Virus record (IMG/VR): IMGVR_UViG_3300004463_000226
Span: 170,336 to 234,335 of that record
DNA: 64,000 bases
Reading direction: 5' to 3' (one strand)
Position 1 is the first letter of the stretch. Each line of letters opens with the position of its first letter. A model generated the notes under the pieces. That model did not search any database. It was not told the origin of the DNA and saw nothing but the letters and a program-made list of their open reading frames with translations. This document shows, piece after piece, positions 3,570-59,714 of this stretch. The position numbers were made by a program, and so were the translations under genes.

Positions 3570-5395
3570 TACATTACCTCCCCAAGGTCAATAATAAGTG
3601 GTTCGGCAAACCATTTATTAACATCTTCTTTACTTAATACTACACGCTTACGTTTGTTCATCTTGAACTTATTACGAAGCATATCGTTAAGTTCAACAAC
3701 ATTTGGCATTCCAAACCACTTAGTTGCCATGTTAGCTACATTGCCTGTAAGTAGGTTATCAACGAAGTCTTTACCAGCGTCTTCAACTTTACCTTTCTTA
3801 TCAGCCACAGCATTTTTCATAGCTTCTTGGATATTTCCACCAATGATTAGTTTCCCTACCATACAGTTTGGAGCAATGTTGAATGCAATAATGATATGAG
3901 GATACATTGCTGAGAAGTCCATGTCAACGACATTATCAAAGATATACATACTTGGATTACCGAATACAGGTATACCCATGAAGTCGTTTAACTTTGGATC
4001 TGCTACTAATGCACCATCAAACTTTTCATCTTCATCATCTTCCTCATTATCCGCTTGATAATCTAGTCCATAGTCTAGATTGATGTTGTTACCAATGATT
4101 AAACCTTGCTTATAATACTCAATATAAGCTCGGTTCTTTAAGAAGACAGTCTGCTTAAATATTTTGTGATACACTGTTGCATTTGAATAAGCACGTTGAT
4201 ATACGTTATCAATATCAGATGTCTTTCTTTCAATTCCTAACTGTAGAAGAACGTCTTTTATATTGTACATGACGAACTTCTTATAGTCTTTATAAGGCAA
4301 TGTCTGGATATTAGCATCTTCACTATAGTCCAGCTTTTCATCACCAATCTCTTTCTTTGCTACTGCATTTAAGGCATAGGAACGTAGTTCTCCGCCACCT
4401 TTACGTAAACCCGCATAGAGTAACATTTGGTCTAGATATGCTGTATAAGAAGAAATCATAAAGTAATCTGATTTATTCTCAACTTTAAAGTTCCTAGAGT
4501 CTTTTTTATAAAATAAGGACTTAACTTTAAAATCCTTATGGCACATGATGTTAACAGGATCTAATCCTAAAGCTTTAATCCGTGCAATAATGTACGGAAT
4601 ATCGAACGCCATGTTCCAGATCATTATAAAGTCACGTTTCAGAGTATTGATCAATTTGAACATGTCTCTTATTAAATCGGGTTCATCATCATACATATAG
4701 AATCTATATTCGAGTGTACCATATGTTTCATCAAAGGCTTCATGTAATTCTTCAATGAACTCATCTATAGTATCTTCAAATTCTTGAATCTGTGGATTAT
4801 TAGGATTACGTAATAAGAACGTATAAGATACCATATCCTCTTCATCCACAATTGTAACTGCATTAATAGGACATTCACCATCTTTAGGGAAACCTTCAAT
4901 ACCTATAGAATCGACCTCTATATCTAGGTACTGCTTAGTTATAGGTTTCTCCTTATCATTATGATTGTGTAAGAACCATTGTATTCGATACCAGTTATCG
5001 ATATCATAATCTGAGCCGAAGACATTCTTATACTTATGAATGTTACTTATAGCTCTAAAGTTTTTACTCTGTTTCATCTTATTGATGAATTGCACATAGT
5101 TAGGTCCTGCTTGATCTGCTATATAGTACGGTAAATTTCTAAATGTGTACTTATGCATCTCAGCATTTTCAATTTCGATAAATGTGCGGTTATACTTATT
5201 ATTGATTGCATTTTCTTTTGCAAAATAGAATTCCATCTCAGGTGATTCGATTGTTTCTAAGTGCTTTTCCCCTGTCCTGAGATCTTTATATATAATATCT
5301 AGGAAATCTTTATAACCTGTGCCCTTGTTAGGTCTATGATAAATTGTATTCACAAGCATCAGATTTTCCTTATCTAAGTGTGGTAAGATTCTCAC
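3569..5395 (-). CDS. Family B DNA polymerase, N-terminal subunit (3'-5' exonuclease + motif A) of a split enzyme
   Basis: Seen: ExoI YLDIEVD, ExoII WNMAFDIPYI, ExoIII YNIKDV, motif A DMDFSAMYPHII; no motif B/C before the stop. Known: phiKZ-like phages encode a split PolB. Confidence 0.88.
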   Translation of the reverse strand: MRILPHLDKENLMLVNTIYHRPNKGTGYKDFLDIIYKDLRTGEKHLETIESPEMEFYFAKENAINNKYNRTFIEIENAEMHKYTFRNLPYYIADQAGPNYVQFINKMKQSKNFRAISNIHKYKNVFGSDYDIDNWYRIQWFLHNHNDKEKPITKQYLDIEVDSIGIEGFPKDGECPINAVTIVDEEDMVSYTFLLRNPNNPQIQEFEDTIDEFIEELHEAFDETYGTLEYRFYMYDDEPDLIRDMFKLINTLKRDFIMIWNMAFDIPYIIARIKALGLDPVNIMCHKDFKVKSLFYKKDSRNFKVENKSDYFMISSYTAYLDQMLLYAGLRKGGGELRSYALNAVAKKEIGDEKLDYSEDANIQTLPYKDYKKFVMYNIKDVLLQLGIERKTSDIDNVYQRAYSNATVYHKIFKQTVFLKNRAYIEYYKQGLIIGNNINLDYGLDYQADNEEDDEDEKFDGALVADPKLNDFMGIPVFGNPSMYIFDNVVDMDFSAMYPHIIIAFNIAPNCMVGKLIIGGNIQEAMKNAVADKKGKVEDAGKDFVDNLLTGNVANMATKWFGMPNVVELNDMLRNKFKMNKRKRVVLSKEDVNKWFAEPLIIDLGEVM

Positions 5396-53468: not shown

Positions 53469-54641
53469 TTAAACTGCAATTGATATTCCATGAACTGCAC
53501 GAGTTATTGCAGTATAATCCAATCTCTGCTGATAATCTCTAGAACCCATACGTTCTCTATAATAAAGAACGTTCGGATATTGTGAACCTTGAGATAAATG
53601 TACAGATATAGCATAAGCAAACTGAAACTTATTGGAGAAGTTAAATCTGTTCATACTATTGTCTGTTACAGGTTGGAATAGATACTCAAAGTCCATAGAT
53701 ATTTTTCTGAAAGCTTTATCTTGTAAGAACTCTGGTCTAAAGTCAATGGATACAGATTTACCGTTATAAGTATCTAAGTAGATATCATCAATATAACCGA
53801 TTAGTCCATTAATCAAATAGAGATTATCATCAATAGCCATTTTCCAGTTATTCTGACGACAAACTATCTTATCCCCATAAATAGGAGTTTTTGATTTGAC
53901 TCCTAAGATATTCTGACGGTAATAAGTATTGATATTCTGACGAGTTTCATTCTTACCACAGATAATAATATCAGAACTTTTCATTAGATCGTCATTGATA
54001 TCTTCCTTGTCAATTATAAAGCAAGAATCTCCATACTTACCAATTTCAAGTTTCTTACCTTTGAGAGCTTGTTGGCTTAACCAGATAATAGGATTATTTT
54101 CACTTTGACGCATAATCTGAGTTAGAATAACATCGGGCTTCTGTAGGAAATAAGGGTTACCAAATACTGGTGGTAGCTGATTCAAATCTCCTAATACTAG
54201 TACAGGTAAACCAAAGCTTAGTACATCTTTAGCAATATTAAAATCAACCATAGAACCTTCATCTATTACTAATAACTTAATATTACTAGGTAAATTAGGT
54301 TTCTTCATAAAGCTAAATCTAGTTATAGCACGACCATTCTTTGTCAGTATATTACCTTCATCATCTAATTTAGGTACATGAACAAGGTCATATATTGTAC
54401 TATGAATAGTTTTAGCAAAGTTCCCCTTTAATGCTAATTGCATTGCTGCTTTACCTACATAAGCCATAAATAATACTTCAGAAGGTTTTAATCCAATGTC
54501 CTTTATAAGCTCATATACAATACTGGTTTTACCTGAACCTGCTGGACCTGAAATCTCAAATACTTGTTTCATCTGTGACTTCCACCATTTACCAGCTAAC
54601 TTCCTAGCAGTATCTTGTTGCGGGTTTAATATAAAGTCCAT
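53469..54641 (-). CDS. SF1B helicase (Dda/RecD-like)
   Basis: Seen: GPAGSGKT, TIHS, VIDEGSMV, LGDLNQLPPV, LTQIMRQ, SQGSQY, YTAITRA. Confidence 0.92.
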   Translation of the reverse strand: MDFILNPQQDTARKLAGKWWKSQMKQVFEISGPAGSGKTSIVYELIKDIGLKPSEVLFMAYVGKAAMQLALKGNFAKTIHSTIYDLVHVPKLDDEGNILTKNGRAITRFSFMKKPNLPSNIKLLVIDEGSMVDFNIAKDVLSFGLPVLVLGDLNQLPPVFGNPYFLQKPDVILTQIMRQSENNPIIWLSQQALKGKKLEIGKYGDSCFIIDKEDINDDLMKSSDIIICGKNETRQNINTYYRQNILGVKSKTPIYGDKIVCRQNNWKMAIDDNLYLINGLIGYIDDIYLDTYNGKSVSIDFRPEFLQDKAFRKISMDFEYLFQPVTDNSMNRFNFSNKFQFAYAISVHLSQGSQYPNVLYYRERMGSRDYQQRLDYTAITRAVHGISIAV

Positions 54642-55561: not shown

Positions 55562-55804
55562 TCATTCAGATAGGGATTCTTCTTTTTGACATTCTTTTCT
55601 TCTTTGTTTTCTGAGTTCTCTAGCATCAATTAAACGGAACAATTCATTTTTATTACTATGTATTTCATCAAATATACTTTCATGAGGCATAAATCTTGAG
55701 TTAGATATATGTCGTTCCAGCTCATTTATTTTACAAGTAAGCTCTGTAATTTTTTCATCTATCTCTTTATCAGTTAAATCAATAAATGCTCCATATATCA
55801 ACAT
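55562..55804 (-). CDS. Hypothetical coiled-coil protein
   Basis: Seen: 80 aa, AAGGAGG RBS. Confidence 0.7.
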   Translation of the reverse strand: MLIYGAFIDLTDKEIDEKITELTCKINELERHISNSRFMPHESIFDEIHSNKNELFRLIDARELRKQRRKECQKEESLSE

Positions 55805-55828
55805 AGCGATCCTCCTTAAAAAAGAGGG

Positions 55829-56645
55829 TCAACTGACCCTCTTCGTTCTATTTATTGATGAAGCAAAATCAAATAATGTTTCTGGTTCATCATTTTCATC
55901 CACCATTTGTCGTTCAGTGGCATTCTTCTTACCTCGTTTAGCTCCCAAATCAACTGCATCGAAATCAGAAGCCAAGCTAGTTTCAGATAGAGATGTTTCA
56001 AGATGAACATCATCCAATAGACGAATTCTATTTCCAATTTCAAATGGATGGTTAAAGTAAGTTAAATCATGTGGATCACGATAACGTATCTTGATACGTT
56101 TCATAGTTAAGTAATACTGATTAGAGCCACGTTTCTTCTCAACGTTAATGATACATGCCCAGTCAGCGTTTTCCATAACTTCCCACGCTGAACCTACGTT
56201 AGAACGACCTACAAATCGTCCTACATCTTCTTTATTTGCTTCGAGGGCAGCATCTACTACAGTAGCTGCTCCACGGTTAAGCTGATGAGCTGTTATCACA
56301 GGAACGTCCAGTTCTATAGCTAATGACTTTAATTCATTTGTGACATTTTTCAGCTCTTCTTTTTCATCCTTACCATACTCAGCTGGACGAATACGTTTAA
56401 TGTAATCGAGGATCAGAGTAATTACTTCCCTACCATCATCCTCAATATCCTCAATGATTGTATACAGATCATTTGTATCGATGCTACGGTTAGGATAATA
56501 CTTAATCATAATATCAATTTCATCATCATCGCGAAGTGTCATCTGCCCCTGTTCACGAAGCATCTTAATTACCTGCTTCGGTGTGTAGTTACGAATGTCT
56601 TCAGGGGTAACTGTCATATTAAATAAACGCTCAACAGTTTCTTCT
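55829..56645 (-). CDS. DnaB-like (SF4) replicative helicase, exon 2
   Basis: Seen: EETVERL, LILDYIKRI, ITAHQLNR, WEVMENAD motifs; joins exon 1 in frame after intron removal. Confidence 0.9.
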
Positions 56646-57637
56646 CGCACATTCACATAGTTCGTTAAACTATGCAGTTCTCTTATGAACTTCCCTAAGT
56701 TTCCCTAGGATACTAGACTATATCTTCCCTTAATAAGGGTCTCTCCATTTCGATTTAAGGGATTCTCACCCACTCACTTGAGCCCTACTCCTAATGTGTT
56801 TTACCACCAAATGGGATAGTCGTTGAACCTTCTTGTATGTGTTAGAATTTATACTTATAGCTTATTTCTGTTCTCAATAACCTTGGTTTTATTTTTGTCT
56901 TTATATATGAGTTTAGTGACTTCTTACTATATTCTTTAGAAGAATATTCTTCTATAATCACACTGACAATATCTTTAGTTTTCAGACCTTTCTCTAATAG
57001 CTCACAAATTCTCTCTATAACTTGATCTGAATATTTTGAATTGGGATTATTTGAACCTTTATATTTCTCTTTGAAGAGTTCGGCACAATTGTTTAGCCCT
57101 GTTTCAACAGCATGACTAACATTATATTGATGAGTAGACCATTCGAGATTTTTGTAATAATTATTTGATTTTCTACCATCTTTATGATTTACAAAAATCT
57201 TTTCTTTTGTTCTACCTGCAACAAAATGCCATGCTACTAATCTATGAACTAGAACTTTTTTATACTTACCGTCATCTCCAATTAGGGTAATATGTTTATA
57301 CCCCTGACTATGGTTAGCTGGTTCAATATTCCTATTCTTTAAAAAACTATAGATTTGTCCGTGATCCGAAATCATATAGCACTCAGTCATTATACCAGGG
57401 TAATAGAGCATACTCCATCTTTCATCTATAATCAAATCCACATATAATGTCATTGATACACCTCCTAAAACATAGTGTACCGATTCTAACACATACAGCT
57501 TGGCTGCGGATTTTCCAATCTTAAACCTTGTTACCATACCTGAATAGTTAGTTCAGCCATTATAATGTCACCATTATAACTTGGTAGTTTAAGCAATAAG
57601 GACTTCCCCGCAATTAAGAGAGAAACGGCAAAATTTC
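56646..57637 (-). mobile_element. Group I self-splicing intron (992 nt) with HNH ORF in the P6 region
   Basis: Seen on minus: P AATTGCGGGGAA, Q AATCCGCAGC, R GTTCAACGACTA, S AAGATATAGTCT; P1 ACGGU/GCCGU with U.G; terminal G at 56646; P10 UUUU/AGAA; splicing restores MENTVEETVERL. Confidence 0.93.
56842..57453 (-). CDS. Intron-encoded HNH homing endonuclease (NUMOD4/HNH, I-HmuI-like)
   Basis: Seen: LVHRLVAWHF, VNHKDGRKSNNYYKNLEWSTHQYNVSHA; AGGAGG RBS before ATG 57453 (the track's longer start lies in intron core). Confidence 0.9.
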   Translation of the reverse strand: MTLYVDLIIDERWSMLYYPGIMTECYMISDHGQIYSFLKNRNIEPANHSQGYKHITLIGDDGKYKKVLVHRLVAWHFVAGRTKEKIFVNHKDGRKSNNYYKNLEWSTHQYNVSHAVETGLNNCAELFKEKYKGSNNPNSKYSDQVIERICELLEKGLKTKDIVSVIIEEYSSKEYSKKSLNSYIKTKIKPRLLRTEISYKYKF

Positions 57638-58509
57638 ACCGTGTTTTCCATAGTTATGAATAAAATAGTTTTACGTTTACCTACCTTTTTAGTAGGCATG
57701 CCTTTATTATATCTCTTGATATCCTGCGCTGTCTTTAAGAGTATACCCGATTTGAAGCCAGCTGGAAGTCCCATGTATACATATAGGCGCTTAGACATAT
57801 AACCAGGAGCAAGAATTTGATTAAGCATTTTAATCCCTGTTTTCAATATACGGGCAGGGTCTTTAAGAGCATTTACGATGTCTGTCATAGTATCTTCAAA
57901 TGTTTCTTCATCCAATGTAAATGTATCTACATCTTCCATTACATTTGACTTACGAGACTCATTTAAAAATGCTCGGAATAATTCTACAGCTTCTTTATTA
58001 ATCTCCTGGAAGCTTTCATAGTCACCAGAATCTAACTTCTCCATGGTGCTATAGATCTTATCTTTATATCTGAGAAGATAAGCATAAACTAATCGGTCTA
58101 CAATAGCCTTGTTTATGTAGCGAATCTCATCATAGTTTATTCGTTTATACGCTGGGAGATTCTTAATTATCTCCTCATTTTCTTCACTGTTAGAATCAGA
58201 GCGACAGAAGTTAGTGATTATACTTTCATTCTCCATCCCTAATTCTAATCTAGCTTTTAAAGCACGCTGTATAAAATAAAAGCGTGCTTCTAACTTTTCA
58301 TTTCTTTCATAGACAGAATCATCTATAACATCAAACAATTTCTTCATGTTTGTTAATGATTTACGTGTAATCTGTCTAGAGTCCTTGAATAAATACCCTA
58401 TAAGGTTATTCAACATTGTTACATCAAATATTAACTTGATCTTCTTTGGTTCATGTGCACTTGAGATTTTAAATCTCGAACTGTTTCGTCTACTAGCAGT
58501 TACACTCAT
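57638..58509 (-). CDS. DnaB-like (SF4) replicative helicase, exon 1
   Basis: Seen: LKTGIKMLNQIL, Walker A-like GLPAGFKS, ILFITMENT; spliced CDS 872+817 nt = 562 aa. Confidence 0.9.
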
Positions 58510-59714
58510 TTACTAACTGCCACCTTCCTAGTTAGAATTTCTTCATGTAAATAGTATCTCATCCTATCTAATGGGATGTTCTTCCCATACTTTATTTTAA
58601 TATATTCAGTCATTTTTTCTTCAGGTTCCATGTTTTTGTCGAATATGAACCAATACTTATCAAGTAACTGATTTACTTTCTCTTCAATCTCTTTCTTTAC
58701 CCTAAGCTTACTATTATTATTGATTTTAAGCTTAACCCTAGAATACTTAGCAAATGTTTCATTAAGCATACTTGTTAATAGTGACGGATTAGGATAATCC
58801 TCTGGAATATTAATCTCAAATCTGAGATAATCAGATGTTAATGCTTCAGCTATCTGAAGTAGATATTCAACTTGCTCCCTCTCGCTCTTATTAAATACAG
58901 TAGATTGATATTCAATTTTAACTGTATCAAAAGTTCTAGCATGAGTATTTATGATAAACTCATCATAGTAATCACCAGTAGATGGTGTATAGTATGTCAT
59001 GATATAGCCTTTATTTTCTTCCTCACCAAACGCCCATCTAGAATAAGATCCAACATATTTAAACCTATCAAATTGCATAGGTTTGTGAATATGACCAAAA
59101 TATATCGGACCTTTTGTTATTGCAAGCAATTCTTCTAGTTTGAATATAGGTGCTTGCGATCTTGTAGTTTCACTCTCTTGATTCGCTGCAACAAATGTAG
59201 CTTTATCAACTACTCCATGACCAAATACCATGTCATATTCATGCTCAAAATATTCCTTATAGAACTCATTCTTATCTTTCATATATTCTTCAGGAATATA
59301 AAGCACATACATATCGTCAAATAACCACTCTGCTTCAACTGTATGAATTACTCTAAAATCACACGATGTGACAGAGTTTAAACCATCAAACATTTCTAAC
59401 TGTTTATTGTCATGTGACTCCGTACCTTTAAGGATACGTAATTTAGCACATTTATCAGCACAAATTTTCATAAGTCTAGTTAGAAATTTTAAAGCGTATT
59501 TAGCGTGATCTGAGTTAGCTGAGATCTTTGTATGGAAAAAGTCACCTGGAATTACAACGAAATCCAGTATCTCTAGCTTCTCAGTATTCTTTAAAAATCC
59601 TTCTTTTAACTCTCTATACCATATCTTAGCATCAAATGCTCCATTATGGATATCTGGTAATAACGCACCAACATATGCAGATTTATTAGGCAAGTATATC
59701 ACCCCAACCTTCAT
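58506..59714 (-). CDS. sbcD: SbcD/Mre11-like metallophosphoesterase nuclease
   Basis: Seen: PDIH, PGDFFH, GTESHD, FGHG, FGHIH, YVGSYSRWAFGE. Confidence 0.88.
   Translation of the reverse strand: MKVGVIYLPNKSAYVGALLPDIHNGAFDAKIWYRELKEGFLKNTEKLEILDFVVIPGDFFHTKISANSDHAKYALKFLTRLMKICADKCAKLRILKGTESHDNKQLEMFDGLNSVTSCDFRVIHTVEAEWLFDDMYVLYIPEEYMKDKNEFYKEYFEHEYDMVFGHGVVDKATFVAANQESETTRSQAPIFKLEELLAITKGPIYFGHIHKPMQFDRFKYVGSYSRWAFGEEENKGYIMTYYTPSTGDYYDEFIINTHARTFDTVKIEYQSTVFNKSEREQVEYLLQIAEALTSDYLRFEINIPEDYPNPSLLTSMLNETFAKYSRVKLKINNNSKLRVKKEIEEKVNQLLDKYWFIFDKNMEPEEKMTEYIKIKYGKNIPLDRMRYYLHEEILTRKVAVSK

What the first reader, a model, noticed from the sequence alone, without database searches (positions are those of the whole stretch)
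55829..58509. Group I intron with HNH endonuclease splits the DnaB-like replicative helicase next to its catalytic glutamate
The track shows two helicase fragments and an HNH ORF, but the intervening DNA has a complete group I core on the minus strand: P (AATTGCGGGGAA), Q (AATCCGCAGC), R (GTTCAACGACTA), S (AAGATATAGTCT, P7 GACUA/UAGUC). Exon 1 ends ACGGU, which pairs with GCCGU just inside the intron (U.G splice pair), and the intron ends in G at 56646. Removing 57637..56646 gives ...ITMENTVEETVERL..., a 562-aa ORF. The insertion lies about three codons after the presumed DnaB H1a Glu. The HNH ORF sits in a long P6 stem (TGTATGTGTTAGAA / TTCTAACATACA). DnaB is a classic intein site; I do not recall a group I intron in a jumbo-phage helicase, but that needs checking. 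Automated annotation would miscall this as a broken gene.
Basis: partly seen in the sequence, partly recalled or inferred. Interest (0 to 1): 0.8.

Follow-up and report, generated by a model that had tools for sequence, protein, structure and literature searches.

The report
Group I intron splitting phage helicase
The "broken" replicative helicase gene of this uncultured 234-kb soil phage is one gene interrupted by an ordinary mobile self-splicing (group I) intron that carries its own HNH homing-endonuclease gene, a correct call but a familiar kind of element in phages.

Summary
On the minus strand a DnaB-like helicase gene is split into exon 1 (58509-57638) and exon 2 (56645-55829) by a 992-nt insert (57637-56646). 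The insert has a complete group I core (P1 with a U.G splice pair, P3-P9.2, terminal G). A 203-aa I-HmuI-like HNH endonuclease ORF is looped out of a perfect 14-bp P6a stem. Removing the insert gives a 562-aa protein that is colinear, with no residue gained or lost, with intronless helicases of AR9, PBS1 and about ten metagenomic relatives. One relative (L010) has an ORF-less homologous intron at the same codon that passes Rfam's Intron_gpI threshold. Family profiles built without the window hit its two ribozyme halves at E=5e-15 and 6e-47, and the core helices covary. Rfam misses the window's copy, most likely because of the ORF; the accepted phage K lysK intron also scores below threshold. 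Splicing itself was not observed: no RNA run was listed. This is not new in kind. Related introns sit in Kayvirus lysK and Bacillus phage DNA polymerase genes. Other group I introns occupy at least five further sites of this same helicase in relatives, including cultured phages Internexus, Goe21 and phiR1-37, where the pieces are annotated as separate genes. Verdict: new member of a known kind, low-to-moderate interest.

The parts
57638..58509 (-). Helicase exon 1 (residues 1-290 plus the first two bases of codon V291). Contains the Walker A-like GLPAGFKS and the invariant TMEN motif.
   Evidence: ORF list and sequence. Pfam divDNAB 4.5e-12. tblastn to the AR9/PBS1 helicase ends exactly at the junction.
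56646..57637 (-). Group I intron, 992 nt, with phage-type P7.1/P7.2 extensions.
   Evidence: Core elements read directly. Family profile hits. Covariation. Homologous ORF-less intron at the same site in L010 passes Rfam's threshold.
55829..56645 (-). Helicase exon 2 (last base of codon 291 to the stop at 55831-55829).
   Evidence: Pfam divDNAB and DnaB_C. tblastn resumes one or two codons after the end of the exon 1 match in intronless homologues.
57625..57642 (-). P1 hairpin: exon ACGGU (57642-57638) paired with the internal guide GCCGU (57629-57625), with U.G at the 5' splice site. UUUU (57633-57630) could pair with exon 2 AGAA as a weak P10.
   Evidence: Direct reading. The same exon end ATGGAAAACACGGT occurs in L010, which carries an intron at this site; the intronless alleles differ here.
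57617..57623 (-). P3 5' strand UCUCUCU, pairing with GGAGAGA at 56746-56740.
   Evidence: 86% of family cells paired, 119 cells with changes on both sides; slid controls 44-58%.
57503..57615 (-). P4-P5 domain: P element (57615-57604), P5 with two extension hairpins (57579-57560, closed by a GUGA loop, and 57556-57540), and Q element (57512-57503).
   Evidence: P4 96% paired with 38 double changes; P5 87% with 45. Compensatory changes in both extension hairpins are visible in the 8-sequence alignment. About 79% identical to DNA polymerase introns of Bacillus phages such as SIOphi.
57484..57503 (-). P6 (CC) and P6a 5' strand (TGTATGTGTTAGAA, 57497-57484).
   Evidence: Perfect 14-bp complement of 56847-56834. 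P6 100% paired in the family with 40 double changes.
56842..57453 (-). HNH homing-endonuclease ORF (203 aa from ATG 57453; Shine-Dalgarno AGGAGG at 57466-57461), looped out of P6a. Its stop codon TAA (56844-56842) lies inside the P6a 3' strand.
   Evidence: Pfam HNH_3 34.5 bits against a cut-off of 24.8; NUMOD4 22.0 against 23.4. I-HmuI structure 1U3E E=2.3e-14. Homologous ORFs in helicase introns of L011-L013 and Goe21 and in the phage K lysK intron.
56828..56847 (-). P6a 3' strand (56847-56834) and P6 3' strand GG (56829-56828).
56715..56828 (-). Catalytic core: R element with P7 5' strand GACUA (56821-56817), P7.1 (56816-56789), P7.2 (56785-56759), P3 3' strand (56746-56740), P8 (56739-56727), and S element with P7 3' strand UAGUC (56720-56716).
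   Evidence: P7 and P7.1 100% paired, P7.2a 96% with 44 double changes. Window 56796-56677, which takes in most of this core and P9-P9.1, is about 83% identical to the lysK intron of 113 Staphylococcus phages. Rfam partial hit on J8/7-P9. The minimum-energy fold recovers P7.
56646..56709 (-). P9 (56709-56694, GAAA loop), P9.1 (56690-56677), P9.2 (56674-56656) and the terminal G (omega G) at 56646.
   Evidence: P9 74% paired with 73 double changes, P9.1 86% with 11, P9.2 71% with 45. The minimum-energy fold recovers all three hairpins. L010's intron also ends in G before the in-frame exon.

Best explanation
A mobile group I intron interrupts the DnaB-like replicative helicase gene of an uncultured AR9/PBS1-like jumbo phage (contig of 234 kb). 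The intron is of the phage type with P7.1/P7.2 extensions and belongs to the same sequence family as the Kayvirus lysK intron and the DNA polymerase introns of Bacillus Herelleviridae. It sits within codon V291, after the second base, three codons past the invariant Glu of the TMEN motif.

Proposed mechanism:
1. The gene is transcribed as one pre-mRNA.
2. The ribozyme folds: P1 forms through the guide GCCGU, and the P3-P8 and P4-P6 domains form the core.
3. An external guanosine attacks after U57638.
4. The freed exon 1 attacks after the terminal G at 56646.
5. The exons are ligated into an mRNA for a 562-aa helicase.

The 203-aa I-HmuI-like HNH endonuclease is encoded in the P6a loop with its own ribosome-binding site. 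It presumably nicks or cuts intronless helicase alleles of co-infecting relatives, so that recombinational repair copies the intron and flanking exon sequence into them (homing).

Shown here: the gene structure, the core helices, homology, covariation, and colinearity with intronless alleles. Inferred, not shown: splicing in vivo or in vitro, endonuclease activity and its target.
For: 1. Colinearity. The exon 1 and exon 2 matches are separated by only the one or two junction codons in AR9, PBS1, BpSp, Machias and LPJP1 and in loci L003-L009 and L011-L014. Junction peptides such as TMENSVEE and TMENTIQE align with the window's TMENTV|EE without a gap.

2. Same-site ORF-less homologue. L010 carries a ~357-nt intron at the same codon, with the same exon end ACGGT and a terminal G. 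It scores 55.6 bits on Rfam Intron_gpI against a threshold of 50.

3. Homology of both ribozyme halves.
- nhmmer profiles from 51 ORF-less family members give E=4.6e-15 (5' domain) and 6e-47 (3' domain), each the only hit in the window.
- Window 56796-56677 (P7.1 to P9.1) is about 83% identical to the lysK intron of 113 Staphylococcus phages.
- The 5' domain is about 79% identical to sequences between DNA polymerase fragments of Bacillus phages.
- 18 hits at or above Rfam's threshold were found in 20 family loci.

4. Covariation. P3, P4, P5, P6, P7.2a, P9 and P9.2 are 71-100% paired, with 38-119 cells per helix changed on both sides. Versions with the partner slid by 1-2 columns mostly give 8-60%.

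5. Group I rules are met by direct reading: U.G at the 5' splice site, terminal G, P7 GACUA/UAGUC, and the J8/7 consensus.

6. Endonuclease. Pfam HNH_3 is above its cut-off and the ORF is homologous to the nicking endonuclease I-HmuI. The ORF sits in P6, as in the lysK intron.

7. No ribosome-binding site or plausible start codon precedes exon 2.

8. In a Kayvirus, full-length lysin from the gene split by the I-KsaI-encoding intervening sequence (there predicted to be a group I intron), whose phage K counterpart matches this intron's 3' domain, was detected by mass spectrometry (PMC5618024).
Against: Rfam Intron_gpI does not reach its gathering score on the window: no hit in gathering mode, and only partial hits of 17.3 and 15.2 bits on a 1.3-kb slice. 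The model aligned neither half across the ~650-nt ORF. The phage K lysK intron also fails, at 33.4 bits.

No RNA evidence exists. No RNA run holding the sequence was listed, so splicing is inferred.

P1 is only 5 bp and the candidate P10 only 4 bp, and this copy has no obvious P2.

No intronless variant of this same phage was seen in the metagenome contigs, so current mobility is not shown.
Confidence: 0.9

Rival explanations
1. The insert is a decayed group I intron that no longer splices. The helicase would then be a pseudogene, or the phage would depend on another helicase.
For: No direct splicing evidence. Rfam score below threshold on this copy. Short P1 and weak P10.
Against: Every core helix is intact and matches the family consensus. 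Both exons keep open frames and the invariant motifs of the family. The HNH ORF is also intact with a strong ribosome-binding site. No second DnaB-like gene was noted in the window; the only other helicase-like ORF seen near the finding (53469-54641) is RecD/PIF1-like.
Confidence: 0.06
2. A free-standing HNH gene has split the helicase into two separately translated subunits that reassemble, as with some split genes of T4-like phages. RNA splicing would play no role.
For: Automated annotation of relatives shows separate CDSs. The exon 1 frame ends at a stop 16 codons into the insert.
Against: The HNH ORF is flanked on both sides by ribozyme halves with highly significant family matches. There is no ribosome-binding site or credible start in front of exon 2, since the GTG at 56656 lies in the intron's 3' tail. 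The break falls inside a beta-strand/catalytic motif, and the junction is exact to the base by group I rules. In relatives the ORF-less version sits at the same site.
Confidence: 0.03
3. The insert is an intein or another protein-level element.
For: DnaB is the protein most often carrying inteins in bacteria, with sites in the P-loop and motif H4 (PMC4760082).
Against: The exon 1 frame hits a stop codon 16 codons into the insert. None of the three ORFs gives a Hint or intein Pfam match. The insert is RNA-structured.
Confidence: 0.005

Closest known systems
Kayvirus (phage K, 812, ISP, A5W and others) lysK endolysin group I intron encoding the HNH endonuclease I-KsaI
   Same: Window 56796-56677 (P7.1 to P9.1) is about 83% identical over ~120 nt. 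The architecture is the same, with the HNH ORF looped out of P6 and its stop just before the R element. The ORF products are homologous (33% identity, E=1e-9). Both copies fall below Rfam's threshold, most likely because of the ORF.
   Different: The host gene differs (endolysin against helicase), and so do the phage family and the guide sequence. The 5' domain is not detectably similar at the megablast level. The window's ORF is longer (203 against 166 aa).
DNA polymerase group I introns of Bacillus Herelleviridae (SPO1/SP82 with I-HmuI, Bastille with I-BasI; the SIOphi-type copies matched here)
   Same: The 5' domain (P3-P6) is about 79% identical to sequence lying between DNA polymerase fragments of SIOphi and relatives. 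The encoded protein is homologous to I-HmuI (PDB 1U3E, E=2.3e-14). By established knowledge I-HmuI and I-BasI are nicking HNH enzymes that drive intron homing.
   Different: The host gene and insertion site differ. The nicking activity and target of the window's enzyme are untested.
Group I introns in the same DnaB-like helicase of relatives (L010-L014; cultured phages Internexus, Goe21, phiR1-37)
   Same: Same helicase family and same intron family. L010 has an intron at the identical codon. Internexus introns score 81.4 and 67.4 bits. In Goe21 a 3' ribozyme domain, and in phiR1-37 a 5' ribozyme domain, abuts the exon break.
   Different: Most sit at other motifs: Walker A (F252/K253), the H3 region (about residues 396-422) and an H4-like motif (W445/E446). 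L010's same-site copy lacks the ORF. Public records annotate none of them as introns.
[quoted passage not shown]
   Same: Same phage clade, and the same habit of introns carrying homing endonucleases invading essential, conserved information-processing genes (PMC12350094).
   Different: The host gene differs. AR9 and PBS1 themselves have an uninterrupted helicase.
DnaB inteins
   Same: Selfish elements aimed at catalytic motifs of the replicative helicase. Intein sites are in the P-loop and H4 (PMC4760082), and relatives of this phage carry introns at the P-loop and at an H4-like motif.
   Different: Inteins splice at the protein level, this element at the RNA level. The H1a-proximal site used here is not among the three DnaB intein sites listed in that survey.

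Membership tests
Group I intron (Rfam RF00028) | Conserved core with paired P3, P4, P5, P6, P7, P8 and P9 and the P/Q/R/S consensus elements | tested here: met
   All helices are complementary in the window (first table) and all elements are located.
Group I intron (Rfam RF00028) | 5' splice site after a U that forms a U.G pair with an internal guide sequence (P1) | tested here: met
   Exon ACGGU (57642-57638) pairs with GCCGU (57629-57625), with U57638.G57625 at the splice site.
Group I intron (Rfam RF00028) | Intron ends in G (omega G), and exon ligation restores the reading frame | tested here: met
   G at 56646. The joined ORF is 562 aa and colinear with intronless homologues.
Group I intron (Rfam RF00028) | Covariance-model score at or above Rfam's gathering threshold (50 bits) | tested here: inconclusive
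   The window gives only partial hits of 17.3 and 15.2 bits. The model aligned neither half across the ~650-nt ORF in P6. The accepted phage K lysK intron also fails (33.4 bits). The ORF-less homologue at the same site passes (55.6 bits). An ORF-deleted version of the window's copy could not be submitted.
Group I intron (Rfam RF00028) | Helices supported by compensatory changes among homologues | tested here: met
   P3 has 119, P4 38, P6 40, P9 73 and P9.2 45 cells changed on both sides, with 71-100% pairing; slid controls are lower. Peripheral hairpins of variable length (P5b, P5c, P6a, P8) are not informative in that alignment.
Group I intron (Rfam RF00028) | Guanosine-dependent self-splicing | not testable with these tools
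   No RNA run was listed. This needs in vitro transcription with GTP and Mg2+, or RT-PCR.
Subgroup IA-type phage introns (P7.1/P7.2 between P7 and P3') | Extra hairpins P7.1 and P7.2 inserted after the P7 5' strand | tested here: met
   The hairpins lie at 56816-56789 and 56785-56759. They are conserved and covary (P7.1 100% paired, P7.2a 96% with 44 double changes). The assignment to subgroup IA rests on the established Michel-Westhof classification, recalled rather than computed.
I-HmuI-like HNH homing endonucleases (Pfam HNH_3 with NUMOD4) | HNH_3 domain above the Pfam cut-off | tested here: met
   34.5 bits against a cut-off of 24.8.
I-HmuI-like HNH homing endonucleases (Pfam HNH_3 with NUMOD4) | N-terminal NUMOD4 module | tested here: inconclusive
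   22.0 bits against a cut-off of 23.4. However, the I-HmuI alignment covers this region (residues 26-125 against 13-110 of 1U3E).
I-HmuI-like HNH homing endonucleases (Pfam HNH_3 with NUMOD4) | Sequence homology to a solved family member, with the HKDG...N motif kept | tested here: met
   1U3E E=2.3e-14. VNHKDGRKSNN in the window aligns with VDHKDGNKDNN in I-HmuI.
I-HmuI-like HNH homing endonucleases (Pfam HNH_3 with NUMOD4) | Site-specific nicking or cleavage of the intronless allele | not testable with these tools
   This needs a cleavage assay on an intronless helicase allele.
DnaB-like (SF4) replicative helicase, Pfam divDNAB PF20307 | Family profile matched above its cut-off across both pieces, in order | tested here: met
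   Exon 1 matches profile positions 11-128 (45.8 bits). Exon 2 matches 173-349 (44.1 bits) and DnaB_C (41.7 bits).
DnaB-like (SF4) replicative helicase, Pfam divDNAB PF20307 | Walker A and motif H3 aligned to solved DnaB structures | tested here: met
   A profile of intronless relatives aligns the ITAHQLNR-type motif (consensus ipvitAaqLnRe) to VPVIALSQLSR of G. stearothermophilus DnaB, and PagfKs to PSVGKT (the Walker A stretch scores weakly on its own).
DnaB-like (SF4) replicative helicase, Pfam divDNAB PF20307 | H1a catalytic Glu identified | tested here: inconclusive
   E288 of TMEN is invariant in six relatives and lies 35 residues after the Walker A Lys. No significant alignment to the DnaB SLEM motif was obtained. 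The assignment is by position.
Intein | Continuous reading frame through the insert, with Hint-domain blocks | tested here: not met
   The frame stops at 57591-57589, 16 codons into the insert. No Hint or intein Pfam hit.

The most novel reading that the evidence does not exclude
The DnaB-like helicase of AR9/PBS1-like jumbo phages may be a multi-site sink for one intron family. Related group I introns, carrying related but diverged HNH genes, occupy at least six positions: Walker A, the H1a-proximal site described here, about residues 396-404 (Internexus), two sites a few codons apart around the H3 QLNR motif, and an H4-like motif. This partly mirrors the P-loop and H4 sites used by DnaB inteins. 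The window's intron is no closer to the same-site intron of L010 (71% identity) than to introns at other sites or in other genes (68-73%). That pattern would fit repeated site-switching rather than simple vertical descent. If so, the clade could serve as a natural series for studying how intron/endonuclease pairs acquire new targets, and perhaps how they act in competition between co-infecting jumbo phages.
Probability: 0.35. Interest if true: 0.45.

Novelty: new member of a known kind. Interest (0 to 1): 0.25.

Why it matters
The practical gain is annotation. Two 'helicase fragments' and an HNH gene are one essential replication gene plus a selfish element. The same correction applies to public records of cultured phages (Internexus, Goe21, phiR1-37), where the helicase is listed in pieces.

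It also shows that the standard Rfam gathering-mode scan misses ORF-bearing group I introns, so intron loads in jumbo phages are probably under-counted.

Biologically it adds one more case of homing elements aimed at catalytic motifs of replication proteins. It also points to a helicase that is unusually intron-rich across a whole phage clade. None of this changes current understanding of group I introns.

Tried and rejected
- **Rfam gathering and E-value scans of the whole window:** no Intron_gpI hit. I do not count this as evidence against, because the known lysK intron also fails and the filters depend on how much sequence is searched.
- **Rfam on Goe21, Internexus and phiR1-37 together:** nothing at E<=0.01. 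This was a filter artefact. A 2.4-kb slice of Internexus alone gave 81.4 and 67.4 bits.
- **RNA evidence:** no RNA run was listed.
- **Intronless allele in the same population:** laying metagenome contigs found no intronless joint. It only confirmed the intron-containing DNA. The related phage in run X16 is not covered at the junction.
- **Hairpin hiding the HNH ribosome-binding site:** the fold is no better than shuffles (z=-0.47), so I dropped the idea.
- **Sigma-70 promoter scan:** fewer sites than in shuffles, so uninformative. The scan's 'terminator-like' site at 57642-57625 is simply P1.
- **Covariation in P5b, P5c, P6a and P8:** uninformative in the 52-sequence MAFFT alignment because the hairpin lengths vary. 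The 8-sequence alignment shows the compensatory changes by eye.
- **AR9 and Staphylococcus jumbo-phage genome papers:** not held in the library.
- **Intein and split-gene readings:** rejected, as set out under rival explanations.
- **Near-identical endonuclease gene elsewhere:** none found among 130 fetched loci; the best match is 40% identity.
Full report
**What is there**

On the minus strand, the ORF at 58509-57589 and the ORF at 56656-55829 both match Pfam's divergent DnaB-like ATPase family. They match consecutive parts of the profile (positions 11-128 and 173-349), and the second ORF also matches DnaB_C. Between them lies an ORF with an HNH_3 domain and a near-threshold NUMOD4 module.

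- exon 1 ends ...AACACGGT at 57638;
- the guide GCCGU (57629-57625) pairs with exon ACGGU, with U.G at the splice site;
- P, Q, R and S are exact;
- P7 is GACUA/UAGUC;
- the insert ends in G at 56646.

Joining 57638 to 56645 gives a 562-aa ORF reading ...ITMENTVEETVERL....

There are three small corrections. The P6a 3' strand is TTCTAACACATACA, a perfect 14-bp partner of 57497-57484. The HNH protein most likely starts at ATG 57453, behind AGGAGG. The GTG 'start' of the downstream helicase ORF lies in the intron's 3' tail.

**Is the junction right?**

tblastn of the two exon translations shows that in AR9, PBS1, BpSp, Machias and LPJP1 the two matches are separated by only the one or two junction codons. 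In AR9, for example, one match ends at 4440 and the next begins at 4447.

Thirteen loci from IMG/VR encode closer relatives (55-72% identity), one of which is the window's own 234-kb contig. Ten of the others are uninterrupted at this point. Their peptides (TMENSVEE, TMENTIQE, TMENSLEE and so on) align with the window's TMENTV|EE without a gap.

A one-base shift of both splice sites would give the same protein. It would, however, put G before the 5' splice site and A at the intron's end, against group I rules.

**Is the insert a group I intron?**

Rfam's Intron_gpI model finds nothing in gathering mode. On a 1.3-kb slice it gives only partial hits of 17.3 and 15.2 bits. This is not decisive, because the accepted lysK intron of phage K, which also carries an ORF, reaches only 33.4 bits against a threshold of 50.

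Four independent lines support the call:

1. **Same-site homologue.** Locus L010 has a ~357-nt ORF-less insert at exactly the same codon, with the same exon end ATGGAAAACACGGT and a terminal G. It aligns along its whole length with the window's intron once the ORF loop is removed, and it scores 55.6 bits.
2. **Similarity to known phage introns.** Window 56796-56677 (P7.1 to P9.1) is about 83% identical to the lysK intron of 113 Staphylococcus phages. The 5' domain is about 79% identical to sequence between DNA polymerase fragments of Bacillus Herelleviridae such as SIOphi.
3. **A large family with matching profiles.** A signature spanning R to P7.2 finds more than 116 stretches in viral contigs. 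Twenty of those loci gave 18 Intron_gpI hits above threshold. Profile HMMs made from 51 ORF-less members, without the window, hit the window once each, at 57623-57498 (E=4.6e-15) and 56833-56648 (E=6e-47), bracketing the ORF.
4. **Covariation.** In an alignment of the window's core with those members, P3, P4, P5, P6, P7, P7.1, P7.2, P9, P9.1 and P9.2 are 71-100% paired. Most carry many cells changed on both sides (P3 119, P9 73, P9.2 45, P5 45, P7.2a 44, P6 40, P4 38). Versions with the 3' partner slid by one or two columns mostly pair at 8-60%. P7 and P7.1 never vary, so they say nothing either way.

The minimum-energy fold of the 3' domain recovers P7, P9, P9.1 and P9.2 (z=-2.05).

**The ORF**

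The 203-aa product is homologous to I-HmuI, the nicking HNH homing endonuclease of the SPO1 DNA polymerase intron (PDB 1U3E, E=2.3e-14). It also resembles more than 1,300 phage records of the same family. Homologues at 32-44% identity are encoded in the helicase introns of L011, L012, L013 and Goe21, and in the phage K lysK intron. Nothing closer than 40% was found among the fetched loci.

The ORF is looped out of P6a and its stop codon lies in the P6a 3' strand. The lysK intron has the same layout. So do the ORF-bearing helicase introns of relatives, where the 5'- and 3'-domain hits bracket the ORF.

**Where in the protein**

The splice site is in codon 291, after its second base. E288 in TMEN is invariant in six relatives spanning 27-69% identity and lies 35 residues after the Walker A lysine. 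A profile of the relatives aligns Walker A and motif H3 to solved DnaB structures, but gives no significant alignment over TMEN. Its identification as the H1a catalytic Glu is therefore an inference from position.

**Context**

The window comes from a rhizosphere metagenome. Contigs of three runs cross both junctions with no differences, so the arrangement is not a mis-assembly. No intronless joint was seen. No RNA run was listed, so splicing is inferred.

Among relatives the helicase is strikingly intron-rich, and family profile hits abut every one of these breaks:

| Site (window numbering) | Motif | Carried by |
|---|---|---|
| F252/K253 | Walker A | Goe21, Internexus, phiR1-37 |
| V291 | H1a-proximal | window, L010 |
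| about 396-404 | before H3 | Internexus |
| about 406-412 | H3 | L012, L014 |
| after Q412 and after about V421 | either side of QLNR | L013 (two introns around a ~29-nt micro-exon) |
| W445/E446 | H4-like | L010, L011 |

Internexus, a cultured Bacillus phage, has two introns at 81.4 and 67.4 bits. GenBank lists these helicases as separate CDSs.

**Comparison with what is known**

Group I introns with HNH or GIY-YIG endonucleases in phage DNA-metabolism genes are textbook. The literature already notes:
- introns in helicase genes of staphylococcal myophages (PMC5526547);
- the lysK intervening sequence encoding I-KsaI (predicted there to be a group I intron), with the full-length product seen by mass spectrometry (PMC5618024);

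DnaB inteins use the P-loop and H4 (PMC4760082). The intron sites in this clade overlap those motifs, while the H1a-proximal site is not among the listed intein sites.

**Verdict**

The element is a new member of a well-known kind. The only mildly unusual aspect is the multi-site colonisation of this helicase across the clade. Confidence that it is a group I intron with a homing-endonuclease gene is about 0.9. That it splices efficiently and is currently mobile remains untested.

Noticed in passing
L013:2648-4000 (IMGVR_UViG_3300025000_000078): Two group I introns of the same family sit side by side in the helicase. They are separated by a micro-exon of about 29 nt encoding roughly LNRTGAIAV, the QLNR/H3 motif. 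The first intron has no ORF; the second carries an HNH ORF.
   Followed up: partly
L016 (Bacillus phage Internexus MW749003.1, 157000-161200); L015 (Goe21 OM728297.1); L017 (Yersinia phage phiR1-37 NC_016163.1): In these cultured jumbo phages the DnaB-like helicase is annotated as two or three separate CDSs with 'hypothetical' or HNH genes between them. The gaps contain group I intron sequence: Internexus at 81.4 and 67.4 bits, and a 3' ribozyme domain (Goe21) or a 5' ribozyme domain (phiR1-37) next to the exon break. All three share a break in the Walker A motif.
   Followed up: partly
L020:969-3800 (IMGVR_UViG_3300001525_000065) and L057:1243-2480 (IMGVR_UViG_3300021256_000002): Five Intron_gpI hits above threshold lie within about 2.9 kb on one strand of L020, and three within 1.3 kb of L057. 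The host genes must be extremely intron-dense; they were not identified.
   Followed up: no
L015-L017 against L016:1000-3400: The same Internexus introns were invisible to the Rfam E-value search when 15.6 kb was submitted, but scored 81 and 67 bits when 2.4 kb was submitted. A negative result from the larger search is therefore not reliable for these introns.
   Followed up: yes
window 55822-55843: A 9-bp GC-rich hairpin (AAGAGGGTCA...TGACCCTCTT) followed by a T run sits directly after the helicase stop codon. It looks like the terminator of the helicase transcription unit.
   Followed up: no
window 58506-59714 (minus strand): The 402-aa ORF upstream overlaps the helicase start by four bases (ATGA) and has no Pfam match. 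In phiR1-37 and Machias the gene in the same position is annotated as an SbcD-like nuclease subunit or a metallophosphatase, so the gene order seems conserved across this jumbo-phage group.
   Followed up: no
window 53469-54641 (minus strand): A RecD/PIF1-like SF1 helicase ORF (AAA_19, AAA_30 and UvrD_C_2 domains) lies about 1.2 kb downstream of the DnaB-like helicase.
   Followed up: no
L011:5850-6402 (IMGVR_UViG_3300029305_003178): A cluster of four tRNA genes lies just downstream of the helicase in this relative.
   Followed up: no
window 55950-58700, run X16 (soil metagenome, 2024): A relative 90-97% identical over the helicase exons occurs in an unrelated, later soil metagenome. Its contigs do not cover the intron site, so whether it has the intron is unknown.
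   Followed up: partly
window 55700-56796: The megablast summary counts one phage record with a place at least 99% identical that was not among the 40 rows listed. It must lie in exon 2 or the 3' ribozyme domain, because 56797-58700 has no megablast match. It is probably a short stretch and was not identified.
   Followed up: partly
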